NCBI GenBank assembly: GCA_964057225.1
Contig: OZ059894.1
Coordinates: 6,696,001 to 6,760,000 of the forward strand
DNA: 64,000 nt
Direction: 5' to 3'
Origin: Auanema rhodensis
Lineage: Eukaryota > Animalia > Nematoda
Position numbers and translations under genes: made by a program. Position 1 is the first letter of the stretch; each line of letters opens with the position of its first letter. The notes under the pieces were generated by a model. That model had not been told where the DNA came from, did not search any database, and saw nothing but the letters and a program-made list of their open reading frames with translations. This document shows positions 28,300 through 57,109 of the stretch, piece after piece.

Positions 28300-31200
28300 C
28301 ATTTTTATTTTTTGCGTTGTCCTGTGATTTGTTTTATTATTTCAAGAAATAAATAATGAATTGGTTCTCCATTTTGTCACTTTATTCCTTCGAAATATAA
28401 CTAATACATTCATCTGAATACAATACATAAGGCAGTCACATATAACTTTGGGATGTTGAAAGCAAATAATTCAAATGAGATTTCATTAAAATTATAAAAG
28501 AAGTGCTATGTGATGTCGAATGACCTAGTCGATTACCTATTACGAAAGACAATCAGAGATGGAGCCAACATGTGAATAACTAGAAATGGTACAGCAAGTA
28601 CTCCGAAGAGGTTCGTGAAGACGAGAGAATTGGGAGCATGAGAGAGAGAGATTGTCTAAATGAAGGAAGAAAGGAAGAAAAATGTTTTTTTTTTGTCAAT
28701 TTACAAAGAATATATGCTTAGGTCGGATCTGAATATGAAGCCGTCCGCTCCACCCAACAGGATTCGTCAATTGTTCTTTTTGGGGAACAGCTTTGCCGAC
28801 ACTTTGAGGTTTTGATTAGGTAAAAAAAAGGAGAAGAACACCTAGATCATTGAACCTACGAAGTTACTTGAGACATGTTGACGTTGAAACATTTAGTTTG
28901 ATGATCGCCTGCAGCGTCATTCATGAACTATATAGTGTCTTCGACTACAAGCACTCAAAGTGCATTCGTTTTGTTCAAGTTTTCCGGTGAACCCATTGCC
29001 ATGATTGAATGAGTCGGCAAAGCATATCCCCTATCGAACCTGAAATTTTGACGATCCCGTCCATTGCGGTACCCGTTTGCGCCGGGGAACGGACGGCAGC
29101 AAATTCTATTGTCCTGTTATGGAATTTCAGTTTGAAGGCAATCAAGAAAGATTTTGGAATTTTTGTGAATCCATATTTAAAAAAAAAGAAAGAAGAGCTG
29201 GAAAACAATAATTTTCGAGAAAATGTGAAGTGGAGAAGTCAGAAAGGGAGAGAGAAAAAGTGGAAGAGTCGAGGTGAAGGAGAGAGGATATGGAAAAGTC
29301 CAGTTAAAGTATCAGTTTGGTACAACTTAACTCGTAACTGTCCTGAGCTCACGAATCCTCAAGCCTCCACTATACATCATCGGGGTACATTCATCATTTC
29401 TGGACAGTTAAAAAAATTAATTAGATAACGCAAGCAAACTTAGAGAAAAAAGGATGCGGTGGGACAGGTATTAAGACATGTGGGAGGGGGATGAAAGACG
29501 AAGAAGGGCCCAATTAGTGATTATTTGATAATCTGAGATTGCATAATGGAACCAGCATCTGGAACCACGTGACGTCCACAATGAAGATTGCTTTTCAAAG
29601 TTTACGAAATCCGTATGAGAATGATGTTGCACGAAGTAACATAAGCTGATCCTGGACATTTGTGCAGCTGAGAAGAAAGCAGCTTGTGAGTTGCTGTTCG
29701 ACCGTTCTTGTATCTCTCTTCAGATGATGCTGGTAGAGGAGTTGGCAGCCGTTTCTAGTTAAATGGGTTGACAAGGAAGAAGACAGGATTCCGTTCGGAA
29801 CGGAGCGGTCTTACGGAGCGCCACGACACAAGGCAGGACAGCTCCGCAGACATGTTGTTGAAAAATAAAAATCACAGAAACTGCTGCCGAAAGCGTTTGG
29901 AAAACGCACTACACAGAACGACGACACATGTGATATCACGAGGATGGCATGTTTGTGACATTCACGTACGTGAGATCAAACAGATCAACCTCAGATGGTC
30001 ACGTGCGGTGTTGCGTACACAGCAGGTTTGCTGGTGCTGAACCTGAAATATGATAAGAATTATATCAATAGGCATGAAATGATAGATCAAAACCATAAAT
30101 AGATAATGAAATGTCTCCTTACTCACCGATTTTCCTGTTTATAAAGCTCGCTTGAATAAGCATCTTGATGGATGTAAATTAAGCAAAATTTCAAGAATCC
30201 GAAGTTCATGTGGGCTAACAGATGTTGGAACGATCTGGAGCTTGCACAGGTGGCACACAGCAGGACCCGAAGTTGAGATGAGCTGGCTAAGTTGTCGTTA
30301 CATCTGCAAACAAGTGGGATAAATGAAGAGTTAAAACATGAAAGTTGCGCATATAGAACGATGAGTAAACGATAAGTAAGATGAGAGCAAAAGGAAAAAG
30401 GAGAGTTGAGGCAAAAGACAAAAAAGTTTGAAGAGAATGCAGTTCAGCCGCATACGAAAATGAGGAAAAAACGAAGATGGAAAACTAAGAGGAGAGTAAA
30501 ATAGATGAGACAAGCAAAAAAAGAAAGAGTAAACAAACAACAAAAACATATAGAAAGGAAATGAGGAGGGAACGAACAAACATGATAGAAATAGAGAAAA
30601 ACGATAGTAAACGAAAATGAACAAAAAGAAAATGGGATGTACTGGGCTATCTGTAAATGAGATGCCAATGCTTGCTGCTATGAACAGAACAGAAGAACAA
30701 TAGTCTAGAAAACAATATTACTTACATCCTTAAGGTTGTTCGAAGGGAAGATCAGGAAGGAAAATTCGTTGTGATATAAGCTCTGATCAACAGTTAAGAC
30801 GAATTGATAGATGGATGAAACGAATAGAAAAGCGGCAATCAGTTCAAATAGGATAGAAATATGAAGAAAAAGAAAGAGAAAAAGAAGGATAAGAAGGAGA
30901 TGATGCAGAAGAAACAAGCAAGAATATAAAGAGCTAGTTGTGACAATCTCTTGGTCAACTATTTGGAAAAACAAATAGTTTTATGTGTTTGAAAACGAAA
31001 AAATAACAAACGAATAATCAAAATAAATTTTTTTCAGGCAGAAATATGGAGAAATGGATTATTGAAATGAGGACATTTCTCAAAAGAACCGAATTGATGA
31101 AAAAATTCAATGTATATGTGTGTACTTTCAGAGTGAAAACATGACGTGCACAGAAAAAAAGTTTAAAGAAGGTACAAAATGATTCTTTCTTTTTTCATTA

Positions 31201-32237
31201 GATTCAACATTTAGCAATATAAAAATTTTGATTCCAATAAAGACGGGTTCAGTCTAATACGAACATGCAAGTCGACACAACATGGGGCTACCGAAAAGCT
31301 AGATGAACACAACAGATGACCAACAGCACAGTCTCTGCTTGAAGACGACAAAGCGGAACCGCAGCAAGGAAATCTTTGACAAGCTTCAGGAATAGAGGTT
31401 TGAAGGCATGCAGCACTCAGTTGTCATAGTCGTTGTAGTGTGGTTGTATGTATCAGGGGGTGGAGAAGACGACAACTACCGTCGTCGACGACAACAACAA
31501 CAAGCTAAAGAGGAGGGAGAAAGATGAAAACAGACGAAGAAAAAAAGAAAAAGAGAGAGGTGGAAATAGAGGGAAAGAAGGAAAGAGAAAGGAAACGACG
31601 GAGAGAGAGACACATAAATGTCGTTTTGTTGGCTGAGCTCATGAAGCTGTAGTTCTTTTTCTTTCTCTCCCAGCCCTCTATTTCTACCCAATTTCTTTGT
31701 GTCCCTCATCGTATCCTGATGCTTTTTTCTGACTATGTTTTGCATCTTTTTTTTTTACTTTTTCTGGCTTTCTTGCTTTCTGCAGTAGCGAACAAACAAA
31801 AATAATAGCCGGTGGCAGCGGGCTAGACTATACTTTCGACCAACTACTTAAACGATATGAATCAGGATGAAGCCAAAAAGAACGAAAATAGAAAAAAATA
31901 GTAATATTGAAAGCTTGACTAAGAGCGATGACCTATGATCATACTATTATATAGATCGAACAATCAGAAAGCTGATGGTTGTACGAACTATATTGAAGAA
32001 AGAGAGGGTGGAGTGAGTAGAAGACAAATTCAGACGGTGAGGAGATAGTTGAAAAATGATGTCAGAGAACAGGTAATATGAATAGAGAATCAGAGAATCA
32101 GACACAGGTCTTCAGTAGCCTCCCGATAGAACCGGTTTTTCTGAAGTGACAACTATGCAACACATAGACGCACTGTTGACAACCAGAAGGCTCACCGATT
32201 CCGATTCTGATGCATATAATGATGTTAGATTAGCTAA
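28300..32237 (-). ncRNA. Candidate spliced, structured long non-coding (or small-ORF) transcript
   Basis: Strong splice signals define exons 32237-32196, 30303-30127 (TTTGCAG|..|GTGAGT) and 30042-> (TATTTCAG|). GC-elevated hairpin-rich 3' part; minus-strand AATAAA at ~28304-28386; no recognisable protein. Confidence 0.4.
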
Positions 32238-34272
32238 CTGGATAAATAGTTAGAATGGATCAGAAAAGCCGGCCAAAATAGCAATCTGTGTACAATCCAA
32301 AGACTAAGGTCAATCAGATGAAAATCTAAACATATGAGCATATACATGAAATTCTATAATTCTTTCGGCATTGTTTCGATTTCACTACAAATGTCATGAC
32401 GACGACAGCAATGGTGACATCAACAGAAGACAAAGAGTCTCACTGCTTTAGACCCTCAACGGATCAAGAAAAATAGAAGAAAACGACGTAAACAAGATTA
32501 CAAACAAACAAATACATTCCAACTAGATAGTTTGACTAGTCAGGGTTAGATTCAAGATTCAAGACTACATGAATAATTTGGAAAATCATGTTTTCTCCGT
32601 CACAGGAAATGTGAAGCTCTCTAGAGGAGAACCATCTATAGCTTCCGATGTATGTACTTTCTCTCACTCTGCCTCTTTCTGCTTCCATCACGTGCTTCAA
32701 GAGTATAAAATGGGAAATAGAGGAAAGACTATGAGAGAACAACGGCAGAGAAATCAAGAGAGAATCGAGCAAATTGGAAAATACCTGAGCATAACAAGAT
32801 TCAAGCTAGATAATTTTAAAAACAGATTTCTATAGTCAGAGCAATCAGCTGATTTATGTACGGATATACATATATTTTTTATAAATAATAAATATAAATA
32901 CAAATATACATATAAATATAAATATACAAATACGTATATATTTATATATATCAATATATAAAAAGGAAGGAGTAAACGATAACGAGGTGAAGAAAATGAA
33001 ACTGAACCTCAATGGTGAGGGACCATCAAATCGGAATTGTGTAGGCGTAAAAATGAGTCAGCTGTGTGGAGTGTTGAACATTTCGGTCAAAGGACACGTA
33101 CAAGATAATTGTCAGCATGTGGCTTTTGGCTAGACTTACAACATATTTAAGATAAATATGTTTGGAAGATTAAGTAGAAAGTGCTTCATGATAACCATTA
33201 TAAAAGAAGATGTGGCAATATAAAAAGAGGTGAAGCTAAAGTCGTCTTATAAGGTAATGCAAATGTGGAAAGGTTTTTGTAGCCGTTATAGTAGCTATTC
33301 ATCAATGAACAGGTCTTCCGCGGGTCATATGACAGGAAAACATGTGGGTTTTCACGAGCGAACAAGCTAGAACCAAACCCTCGCTGAAGCTGTGGTATGG
33401 TTAAGGCCATAGTAATATATGTGAATAAAGCTGGAACCATGAATTAAAATGTATTCGCACGAAAGATGCATGTGGTTCTGGTTTCAAACTGAATATGGCT
33501 GACGACGTAATTGCCGGAGGGCAAGTTCGAGAGTAAGTGCGCAATCGTCGTCCTCTTTCATTGATTTCAGTATAGAAGCCAACAGGCTTTAGGTCTTACC
33601 CCCTCTTCCTCTCTTTGCTATTCCCTCTCTTACTATCTCTTTCCCTCTCTTCATTTCTCTCTCTTTCTCTTCTTGGTTGTAGTAATTGACAAGAAAGAGA
33701 GGGAAAATGCAAATGAGAGTTGAATGACAATCACGAAATGGGAGAGCCGAGACCAACATAGAAGGATAGAGTATGCGAGAGAAAACTTCTAATGTAGAGA
33801 GAGTATGTACTAGCTCAGACATCAGTATAGGCGGGTCTTTCTCTGCTTTGGCGACCATCCAAGAAACATCGATTGCAAACTGACCACATAGCCTCCAGCT
33901 ATACGAATATTGACAGCCATTGAGAGAAACCTGATGAGTTCATTGAGAGTGTGAGAGATTCAGACAGCTGGATGACGATTAGGACGCTATGCGTGAGAGC
34001 GAATAGAAGATAATATTGCGCAGGAAGAGAAGAAAAGAGATGTAAGCAGATGGTCAGAATATAAGGGAGCGAGATCGAGAACTATGTCCCTAAGAGAGAA
34101 ACAGGCGATGAAAGAACAAATAGACTTTAAAAGGAGTCGAGAGATAGATGGGACAATGAAGAAGTGGAAGAGAATGTTGAGAATAAGAGAAGAGAGAATA
34201 TGTGAGAAGCTCCCTCTAGGCCAATTGAACTTCCTGGCCAAGTGCCAATTTCCCTTCAGCGTTAAACGTTGA

Positions 34273-44157: not shown

Positions 44158-44707
44158 ATGGATCGTCGTATTCGCTTCGGACCACCATTTTCTCCTTTAA
44201 TGAACTTCGGAACTCGCTTTTTCGACGATTTCGATTTTGACCGTCCATTCCCTCGTCCATATTGGACTGATCATAGCATGTTGACTGCTCATAAAATTGG
44301 AGAAGCTCAAGATGTAAATTTTTAATCTTTGGAAACAACATAATTCACTTTGCTCAAGGTTGTTGATAATGAACAAGAATACACTGTCTCTGTTGATGTC
44401 TCGCAGTTTGAACCAGAAGAATTGAAAGTTAACATTGTTGATGAAAAACTTGTTATCGAAGGAAAGCATGAGGAAAAGAGTGATAAATATGGAACGGTAG
44501 GCTATCCAACATACACCAAAGCTCATAAAATAGTAAAATATTAAGGTTGAGCGCCACTTTGTTCGCAAGTATCAGCTTCCACCATATGTAAAAGCAGAAG
44601 AAATCAAAAGCGACCTCAGTAAGGAAGGAGTTTTGACTGTCCGTTACGATAAGAAGCCTGATCAACAACCTCGCACAATTCCTATTAAGATTGCACCCAA
44701 ACAGTAA
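44158..44707 (+). CDS. hsp-17: Small heat-shock protein HSP-17 (alpha-crystallin domain), 3 exons
   Basis: MDRRIRFGPPFSP..FFDDFDFDR..RPYWTDHSMLTAHKIG..VSVDVSQFEPEELKVNIVD..IEGKHEEKSDKYGTVERHFVRKY..GVLTV..PRTIPI, close to C. elegans HSP-17. TATA-like TATAAG at ~43941. Confidence 0.93.
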
Positions 44708-56210: not shown

Positions 56211-57109
56211 TCACCGCCTGACAAGTTGAACAGTTTGCATCATTGGAATATTATTATAAGCTAAAGTCTGTTGTAATGTCTCTCTTTGATACGCTTGTTC
56301 TTTTGAAGTTTTATCTCGTTGTCTTCTGTTCTTAAACCAGTTCGAAATCTACAAAGAAATTTAATTATTTAAAAAATGTATTTTTATTACCTGAACTATC
56401 TTCAATTCGGTTACACGCGATATTTCTTTCTTTTGCTCAAGGGTAGGGTAAGGGTTATGCTGGTAGAAATCACGAAGTCTCTATAAACAATAAAATTGAT
56501 AAAATAATATTGCAGTTATAATAAACCTTTCGGCTATTTTCTTTGAAAGAATAAACAGTTTCCTGACCATCCCAAATACTGGCTGGTGGAGGATATTTTC
56601 TTCGAAGACGATATTTTTCAACAGGGCCGAGTTCTTTGCCACGTTTTACTGCATTCTGAAATGAAAAAATAGAAAACTTTAAAAATACAGGTCTTACTTC
56701 TCTGTATCGTCCTTGATACCAGAGCTCTTGTAATTCTTTGAAATATTCTTCTTCAAACCTTGTTTTGGAAATCATTTCAAACATCATATCGAATTTTCCC
56801 ATATATAAAAGAGTATATATATAAGCTAAAAACAATTTATGTATGAAATATATTTAAATAATAAAGCTTACAGATCAGCACAGGTTGAGAAGCATACACA
56901 GGATTCACAAGAGGATTATTGATATTATCAGAAAAAAGTTTGGTTAAAGCATCGCCATCTTCGGCTTTATAAAGTGCTGTACATAGAGCATCCAACTAAA
57001 ATAAATACATATATTTTATAAAATAATAATTATATATTAAAAAAGCAGAGAGAGAAGCTTTTGTGACAGCCGAACTAACCTGCTCACGGGAATATTGGGA
57101 AACAGACAT
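56211..57109 (-). CDS. unc-39: SIX4/5-class homeobox transcription factor
   Basis: SIX domain ..LQELWYQGRYRE..KRGKELGPVEKYRLRRKYPPP; homeodomain IWDGQETVYSFKENSR..YPTLEQKKEISRVTELKIVQISNWFKNRRQRDK. The ETVY tetrapeptide and KIVQISNWF fit UNC-39. Confidence 0.88.

What the first reader, a model, noticed from the sequence alone, without database searches (positions are those of the whole stretch)
29870..29889. miR-2/43/250-family site with TDMD-trigger-like architecture in the candidate lncRNA
Seen: the + strand reads AATCACAG-AA-ACT-GCTGCCG, so the minus-strand transcript carries CGGCAGCAGUUUCUGUGAUU. Recalled C. elegans sequences: miR-43 UAUCACAG-UUU-ACUU-GCUGUCGC and miR-250 AAUCACAG-UC-AACUG-UUGGCA. 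Against either, the site gives perfect seed pairing (2-8), an unpaired centre (about 9-11) and about 9-10 further 3' pairs including one G:U. This is the established geometry of target-directed miRNA degradation triggers (ZSWIM8/EBAX-1 pathway), and miR-43 is a reported EBAX-1-sensitive miRNA. Inference: this locus may be an undescribed non-coding trigger or sponge for a miR-2-family miRNA. Caveats: the match was found post hoc, and this species' miRNA 3' sequences are unknown.
Basis: partly seen in the sequence, partly recalled or inferred. Interest (0 to 1): 0.8.

Follow-up and report, generated by a model that had tools for sequence, protein, structure and literature searches.

The report
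Probable chance miR-43-like pairing site
A 20-base stretch in a gene-poor part of a nematode genome would pair well with the C. elegans microRNA miR-43, in the way RNAs that trigger microRNA destruction do. Matches this good are expected by chance, and I could not show that the site is expressed, conserved or matched by this species' own microRNA.

Summary
The string is at 29870-29889 exactly as reported. Read on the minus strand it pairs with C. elegans miR-43 (sequence verified in PMC3105410): seed 2-8, an unpaired centre, then 10 further pairs with one G:U and one bulged base (-22.3 kcal/mol). It is by far the best of the eight miR-2-family seed matches in the window.

miR-43 is strongly EBAX-1-sensitive, its 3' region is needed, and no trigger has been validated (PMC11648932).

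The statistics are weak. About 1% of shuffled miR-43 tails pair as well at this site. About 2.4% of random pseudo-miRNAs find an equal site somewhere in the window. That implies several such sites per window for a whole nematode miRNA set, and about 0.1 for the four-member miR-2 family.

None of the decisive tests could be run:
- This species' own miR-43 sequence.
- Conservation in related genomes.

The host is a 16-kb interval with no protein or Rfam match. Its minus-strand splice signals are no more than chance gives.

Best reading: a fortuitous match (about 0.8). An ordinary miRNA site is about 0.13 and a true degradation trigger about 0.04. The scan has not reported this site before on other DNA.

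The parts
29870..29889 (-). The reported 20-nt site; the minus-strand RNA would read CGGCAGCAGUUUCUGUGAUU
   Evidence: Sequence read; duplex with verified cel-miR-43 is -22.3 kcal/mol
29871..29877 (-). 7mer-m8 match (CUGUGAU) to the miR-2-family seed AUCACAG. The base opposite miRNA nt 1 (29870) is U, so this is not an 8mer-A1 site
   Evidence: one of 8 such matches in the window on both strands
29880..29889 (-). Part that would pair with cel-miR-43 nt 12-13 and 15-22: 10 pairs, one G:U at 29887, U14 of the miRNA bulged. The longest pure Watson-Crick run is 5
   Evidence: 3' pairing energy -13.4 kcal/mol. Predicted local accessibility of this part is at the 15th percentile of the putative exon
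28365..30042 (-). Putative (inferred, not shown) minus-strand terminal exon. It is richer in GC (about 40-54%) than its surroundings and starts after UUUCAG at 30048-30043. AAUAAA lies at 28386-28381; the 3' end is a guess
   Evidence: No read evidence. The site lies 153 nt into this exon
30043..30126 (-). Putative 84-nt intron, GUGAGU...UUUCAG
   Evidence: The same pattern is expected 0.46 times by chance in this 16-kb strand (P = 0.34), so it is weak evidence
30127..30303 (-). Putative upstream exon, preceded by the acceptor UUUGCAG at 30310-30304
   Evidence: Its open frame (58 aa) has no relative among 1.84 billion representative proteins and no Pfam match

Best explanation
The 20-mer is a fortuitous match. 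It is one of the roughly eight miR-2-family seed heptamers that any 64-kb window of this composition contains. It happens to sit next to a GC-rich run (GCUGCCG) that complements the GC-rich 3' half of C. elegans miR-43. It lies in unannotatable, apparently non-coding DNA of a rhabditid nematode. Nothing shows that it is transcribed on the minus strand, bound by an Argonaute-miRNA complex, or under selection. On this reading it does nothing.
For: Chance rates:
- 1.0% of shuffled miR-43 tails pair as well at this very site. The flank is GC-rich and so prone to stable pairing.
- 2.4% of random pseudo-miRNAs find an equal or better seed-plus-3' site in this window. That gives about 4-6 such sites per window for 150-250 miRNAs and about 0.1 for the four miR-2-family members.
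- By my arithmetic, 8 seed sites per 64 kb times 0.3-1% gives roughly 20-75 equally good miR-43 sites in a 60-Mb somatic genome.

The match was found post hoc, against another species' miRNA.

The host transcript is not established:
- The consensus-intron pattern is expected 0.46 times by chance.
- No Rfam family matches.
- The nearby hairpins are not significant on the minus strand (z = -0.05 and -0.24).
- No ORF at the locus has a relative or a domain.
- The 3'-pairing part of the site is predicted less accessible than most of the putative exon (15th percentile).
Against: - For miR-43 specifically the site is nominally unusual (about 0.025 per window) and far better than the other seven seed sites.
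- miR-43 is exactly the nematode miRNA whose EBAX-1 sensitivity needs its 3' region and whose trigger is unknown.
- The site sits in a GC-rich, exon-like block just after a consensus short intron.
- Four runs labelled 'RNA?' hold about 35% of the sampled words of 27501-33500, which could reflect transcription.
Confidence: 0.8

Rival explanations
1. It is an ordinary miR-2-family binding site. A minus-strand polyadenylated transcript (a lncRNA, or the 3'UTR of a tiny unrecognised ORF ending near 29993) is expressed. Its 7mer-m8 site, with 3' supplementary pairing, is bound by miR-2-family complexes. The site then acts as a conventional target or weak sponge and has no effect on miRNA stability.
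For: - A perfect 7mer-m8 match to a seed conserved throughout protostomes (established knowledge).
- Plausible minus-strand exon-intron signals and AAUAAA downstream.
- About 35% of the sampled words of the surrounding 6 kb occur in four 'RNA?' runs.
Against: - A heptamer occurs about once per 16 kb per strand by chance.
- Neither strand nor expression is shown.
- The 0.35 share is also what a 20-Mb contig set from a roughly 60-Mb genome would give anywhere (my inference and the genome size).
- The splice pattern is not significant.
- No conservation data.
Confidence: 0.13
2. It is a true target-directed miRNA degradation trigger. A minus-strand non-coding RNA presents this site to the species' miR-43 orthologue. 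Seed plus extended 3' pairing puts Argonaute in the conformation, or proximity, recognised by EBAX-1/ZSWIM8. Argonaute is then ubiquitinated and the miRNA decays.
For: - Measured against cel-miR-43 the geometry fits the published features: seed, an unpaired centre covering nt 9-10, and 3' pairing starting at nt 12 and reaching nt 22 of 23.
- In C. elegans miR-43 rises 5.5- to 7.2-fold without EBAX-1 and loses most of that sensitivity when nt 9-23 are replaced. miR-250 and miR-797 are also sensitive, and no trigger is validated.
- A nematode lncRNA trigger has a precedent in tts-2.
- An unchecked scan note reports a miR-43/44 cluster in this genome.
Against: - The native miR-43 3' sequence is unknown, and miR-2-family 3' halves diverge even within C. 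elegans.
- Only 5 contiguous Watson-Crick 3' pairs (8 counting a G:U), whereas 12 of 13 validated triggers have at least 6 contiguous pairs.
- By my estimate tens of equally good sites exist genome-wide by chance.
- The only proposed miR-43 trigger candidate is in the emb-9 3'UTR, and no collagen gene is here.
- The one validated nematode trigger works by seed alone.
- No expression or conservation evidence.
Confidence: 0.04
3. The + strand, not the minus strand, is the functional one. Either the string is a miR-2-family miRNA gene (mature AAUCACAGAAACUGCUGCCG...), or it lies at the poly(A) site of a + strand transcript (AAUAAA at 29862-29867).
For: - The + strand string starts like a miR-250-type mature miRNA.
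- AATAAA lies just upstream on the + strand.
- The + strand is purine-rich over 28-42 kb.
Against: - No pre-miRNA-like hairpin contains the string on either strand (z = +0.47 and -0.24; branched weak folds).
- No Rfam miRNA hit here even at E up to 10.
- The upstream + strand ORFs have no relatives or domains.
Confidence: 0.03

Closest known systems
Candidate miR-43 site in the emb-9 3'UTR of C. elegans (Stubna, Shukla and Bartel, RNA 2025, PMC11648932)
   Same: The same miRNA, and the same idea: a site with extended complementarity to the miR-43 3' region, proposed to explain its EBAX-1 sensitivity. Neither site has been validated.
   Different: The emb-9 site lies in the 3'UTR of a highly expressed collagen IV mRNA of C. 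elegans. The present site lies in an interval with no recognisable gene, in another species whose miR-43 sequence is unknown.
tts-2 lncRNA, trigger for decay of miR-35-42 in C. elegans (Grimme et al. 2025, PMC12324485)
   Same: A nematode non-coding RNA acting through EBAX-1. It shows that lncRNA triggers exist in this phylum.
   Different: tts-2 works through seed pairing alone. It was found by chimeric eCLIP, tested by deletion, and its site is conserved. Here the argument rests on 3' pairing, and nothing has been shown experimentally.
Canonical TDMD sites: Cyrano/miR-7, Nrep-libra/miR-29b, HSUR1 and m169/miR-27a (review PMC10899785)
   Same: Seed pairing, a central unpaired loop covering nt 9-10, and 3' pairing beginning at nt 12-13 and running to the miRNA end.
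   Different: Validated sites nearly all have at least 6 contiguous 3' pairs (Cyrano has 14) and are conserved. This one has 5 Watson-Crick pairs in a row (8 with a G:U, 10 across a bulge) against a foreign species' miRNA, and its conservation is unknown.
Ordinary 7mer-m8 miRNA target site with 3' supplementary pairing
   Same: A heptamer match to miRNA nt 2-8 plus pairing in the nt 12-17 region.
   Different: Supplementary pairing is usually 3-5 bp, and here it is longer. There is no evidence that the site is in an expressed 3'UTR.

Membership tests
TDMD trigger site (ZSWIM8/EBAX-1 pathway) | Pairing to the miRNA seed | tested here: met
   CUGUGAU at 29877-29871 (minus) matches nt 2-8 of the miR-2-family seed. 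It is a 7mer-m8 site, with U rather than A opposite nt 1.
TDMD trigger site (ZSWIM8/EBAX-1 pathway) | An unpaired centre that breaks pairing at nt 9-10 (3-11 unpaired nt in validated triggers) | tested here: met
   Against cel-miR-43, nt 9-11 are unpaired opposite two target bases. This was met only against the C. elegans sequence.
TDMD trigger site (ZSWIM8/EBAX-1 pathway) | Extended 3' pairing: at least 6 contiguous bp in 12 of 13 validated triggers | tested here: inconclusive
   Against cel-miR-43: 5 contiguous Watson-Crick pairs (nt 15-19), 8 counting the G:U at nt 20, and 10 across the U14 bulge. The 3' energy is -13.4 kcal/mol.
TDMD trigger site (ZSWIM8/EBAX-1 pathway) | A cognate miRNA with that 3' sequence exists in the same organism | not testable with these tools
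   No small-RNA data for the presumed species in the paper library.
TDMD trigger site (ZSWIM8/EBAX-1 pathway) | The trigger RNA is expressed on the strand carrying the site | tested here: inconclusive
TDMD trigger site (ZSWIM8/EBAX-1 pathway) | The site is conserved in related species | not testable with these tools
   No nematode genome collection is available. The exact 20-mer occurs in 4 metagenome contigs with unrelated flanks, which are chance hits.
TDMD trigger site (ZSWIM8/EBAX-1 pathway) | The miRNA guide strand rises when the site or EBAX-1 is removed | not testable with these tools
   This needs an experiment. It is known only for cel-miR-43 in ebax-1 mutants, not for any site.
miR-2-family miRNA gene (+ strand reading) | The mature sequence lies in the arm of a stable hairpin precursor of about 60-100 nt | tested here: not met
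   Folds around the string are weak and branched (z = +0.47 on +, -0.24 on -). No Rfam miRNA family hits here.
   There are consensus GUGAGU...UUUCAG (84 nt) and UUUGCAG signals and a downstream AAUAAA. The pattern is expected 0.46 times by chance. No ORF has relatives or domains. No reads were laid.

The most novel reading that the evidence does not exclude
A spliced minus-strand non-coding RNA at about 28.4-30.3 kb is the trigger that directs EBAX-1-dependent decay of this nematode's miR-43 orthologue through seed plus extended 3' pairing. That would be the first nematode trigger of the conventional 3'-pairing type, and it would point to the missing miR-43 trigger class predicted by Stubna et al. 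2025.
Probability: 0.04. Interest if true: 0.7.

Novelty: not a real feature. Interest (0 to 1): 0.2.

Why it matters
The miR-43 trigger is a live open question in nematodes. miR-43 is the clearest case of 3'-region-dependent EBAX-1 sensitivity, yet no trigger RNA has been validated (PMC11648932). The only validated nematode trigger, tts-2, works by seed pairing alone (PMC12324485). A real lncRNA site with this geometry would show that conventional TDMD exists in nematodes.

The evidence here does not lift this site above the tens of equally good chance matches expected per genome. Its practical value is as one entry in a candidate list, to be filtered by expression, native miRNA sequence and conservation.

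Tried and rejected
- **Reads.** Local scripts that scanned the whole window ran on the closed machine only.
- **Transcript contigs through called ORFs.** The look-up of encoding contigs found nothing for the 139-aa + ORF.
- **Homology of local ORFs.**
  - Nothing for the 90-aa + ORF that covers the site.
  - Nothing for the 139-aa + ORF.
  - Nothing for the 58-aa putative exon peptide among 1.84 billion representatives.
  - Pfam gave only sub-threshold noise.
- **Conservation.** The exact 20-mer in metagenome contigs gave 4 hits with unrelated flanks and 38-59% GC, so they are chance.
- **Rfam.** Only the tRNA passed at gathering threshold. At E up to 10 on 28200-32000 nothing fell at the site.
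- **miRNA-gene reading of the + strand.** Rejected, because there is no hairpin.
- **'Array of GC-rich hairpins' at 29790-30040.** The whole-region z-scores are -1.8 (minus) and -2.3 (plus). The roughly 100-nt hairpin at 29915-30020 has z = -0.05 on the minus strand and -2.1 on the plus strand. This is not convincing.
- **Repeat or transposon origin of 29400-30100.** The stretch is unique within the window.
- **Verifying the recalled miR-250 sequence.** Not found in the library. No supplements are held for PMC11648932.
- **Native or related miR-43 sequences.** No Auanema miRNA paper. The H. contortus miR-43 paper prints no sequence. The scan's note on a miR-43/44 cluster gives only a title. 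Look-ups by short sequence or by sequence words were not accepted.
- **Kingston et al. 2022.** Not held.

Full report
**1. The observation.** The + strand at 29870-29889 reads AATCACAGAAACTGCTGCCG. A minus-strand RNA would therefore carry CGGCAGCAGUUUCUGUGAUU.

RNAduplex and cofold give one structure for miR-43 against the minus-strand site:
- nt 2-8 pair with 29871-29877
- nt 9-11 face two unpaired target bases
- nt 12-13 pair
- U14 bulges
- nt 15-22 pair, with one G:U at nt 20
- nt 23 is unpaired
- the energy is -22.3 kcal/mol

The recalled miR-250 sequence gives -22.5 kcal/mol, but I could not verify that sequence.

**2. Is it more than chance?** The window has eight 7mer-m8 matches to this seed on both strands. 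This one has a 3' pairing energy of -13.4 kcal/mol, and the others reach -5.7 at best.

The controls give these rates:

| Control | Fraction reaching -13.4 kcal/mol |
|---|---|
| Random 22-mers from the window | 0.3% |
| Shuffled miR-43 tails, at this site (GC-rich flank) | 1.0% |
| Shuffled miR-43 tails, at any of the eight sites | 2.7% |
| Fully shuffled pseudo-miRNAs with at least one such site in the window | 2.4% |

The match is therefore nominally unusual for miR-43 alone, at about 0.025 per window. For the four miR-2-family members the expectation is about 0.1. For a repertoire of 150-250 miRNAs it is 4-6 sites per window.

By my arithmetic, eight seed sites per 64 kb times 0.3-1% gives roughly 20-75 equally good miR-43 sites in a 60-Mb genome. 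The match was found post hoc, in one of hundreds of windows read in this genome.

**3. What surrounds it.** The window is AT-rich (about 33% GC) intron-bearing nematode DNA. It carries:
- exons of a Na/Ca exchanger, a TRM13 zinc-finger protein, a ShK protein and a SIX homeobox protein
- a three-exon small heat-shock gene at 44158-44704
- a tRNA-Leu at 27989-28072

An unchecked follow-up note of this scan attributes the genome to Auanema rhodense. A 2026 preprint describes that genome as 180 Mb in the germline and 60 Mb in the soma. I did not test the attribution.

Between 28100 and 43900 no stop-to-stop ORF looks like a protein:
- Ten of them have no Pfam match above noise.
- The two + strand ORFs at the locus have no relatives.
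- Rfam finds nothing at the site even at E up to 10.
- The stretch 29400-30100 is unique within the window.

**4. The proposed host transcript.** On the minus strand the site lies 153 nt into a block of raised GC content (about 40-54%, 28500-30050). That block follows a consensus UUUCAG acceptor at 30048-30043. Upstream are an 84-nt GUGAGU...UUUCAG intron (30126-30043) and a 177-nt putative exon (30303-30127) behind a UUUGCAG acceptor. AAUAAA follows at 28386.

The same donor-to-acceptor pattern is expected 0.46 times in this strand by chance (P = 0.34).

The only frame open across the junction ends at about 29993. Its 58-aa exon peptide has no relative among 1.84 billion representatives. If the RNA exists, the site is therefore in a lncRNA or in the 3'UTR of an unrecognisable small ORF.

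**5. Expression.** Four 'RNA?' runs hold 0.34-0.36 of the sampled words of 27501-33500. That could reflect about 2 kb of transcript. It is also what any region would show if a run's contigs of about 20 Mb covered a third of a 60-Mb genome (my inference).

Strand and position of any expression remain unknown.

**6. Structure.**
- The string is not in a pre-miRNA-like hairpin on either strand. This rejects the reading that it is itself a miR-2-family gene.
- The neighbouring 'hairpin array' is not significant on the minus strand (z = -1.8 for the whole region; z = -0.05 for 29915-30020).
- In a sliding-window fold of the putative exon, the seed match has average accessibility. The 3'-pairing part is at the 15th percentile.

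**7. Literature.**
- Stubna, Shukla and Bartel (PMC11648932) report that miR-43 rises 5.5- to 7.2-fold without EBAX-1. Replacing nt 9-23 cuts this to 1.7- to 2.4-fold. miR-250 and miR-797 are also sensitive. Triggers are unidentified, and a site in the emb-9 3'UTR is offered as a candidate.
- Grimme et al. (PMC12324485) show that the lncRNA tts-2 triggers decay of miR-35-42 by seed pairing alone. Their paper does not mention miR-43.
- The review PMC10899785 gives the defining architecture: seed pairing; 3-11 unpaired central nt; at least 6 contiguous 3' pairs in 12 of 13 validated triggers; and 3' pairing often starting at nt 12-13. It also notes that hundreds of such sites are predicted per mammalian genome.

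Against cel-miR-43 the present site meets the first two features. It is borderline on the third: 5 Watson-Crick pairs in a row, 8 with a G:U, and 10 across a bulge.

**8. What could not be tested.**
- The native miR-2-family sequences. No Auanema small-RNA paper is in the library. The scan's note of a duplicated miR-43/44 cluster gives no sequence. miR-2-family 3' halves diverge even within C. elegans.
- Conservation. Only chance 20-mer hits turned up in metagenomes.

**9. Verdict.**
- The interpretation cannot be decided with these tools.
- Given the chance rates, the foreign miRNA used for the match, and the unproven host transcript, the most likely explanation is a fortuitous match (about 0.8).
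- An ordinary miR-2-family site in an expressed RNA is about 0.13.
- A true TDMD trigger is about 0.04.
- A + strand function is about 0.03.
- Nothing like this site was reported before by the scan on other DNA.

Noticed in passing
window:27989-28072 (-): tRNA-Leu(AAG) gene just downstream of the putative minus-strand unit (Rfam 56.8 bits; ARAGORN). Places 27995-28039 inside it tripped the reads tool's filter, so they were not sent to any search tool afterwards.
   Followed up: no
window:31520-31730: A fold-back of about 190 nt that pairs a GA-rich arm with a CU-rich arm (minus strand MFE -60.7 kcal/mol, z = -3.5; no shuffle folds as well). It gives sub-threshold Rfam hits to long plant MIR precursors (MIR408, 30.9 bits against a gathering score of 64), which probably just reflects a long low-complexity hairpin.
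   Followed up: partly
window:28000-42000: Strong, sustained strand asymmetry. The + strand is purine-rich (GC skew +0.11 to +0.22, AT skew up to +0.26) across about 14 kb with no recognisable gene. The minus strand is correspondingly rich in C/T low-complexity runs.
   Followed up: no
window:44158-44704 (+): A three-exon small heat-shock protein gene (Hsp20/alpha-crystallin, Pfam E = 1e-10 for each of exons 2 and 3) that bounds the gene-free interval.
   Followed up: partly
window:29915-30020 (+): A hairpin of about 100 nt that is moderately stable on the + strand only (-35.3 kcal/mol, z = -2.1; minus strand z = -0.05). It lies at the start of the putative minus-strand terminal exon and has no Rfam match.
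   Followed up: partly
window:283-2487 (+) and 56470-56835 (-): Na/Ca-exchanger exons and a SIX-class homeobox exon lie about 54 kb apart. From memory, ncx-2 and ceh-33/34 are close neighbours in C. elegans, so this may be conserved linkage with a much expanded spacer. I did not test this.
   Followed up: no
window:26289-26603 (-): A (CT)n/(GA)n microsatellite, seen as a run of SLSLSL in an ORF translation.
   Followed up: no
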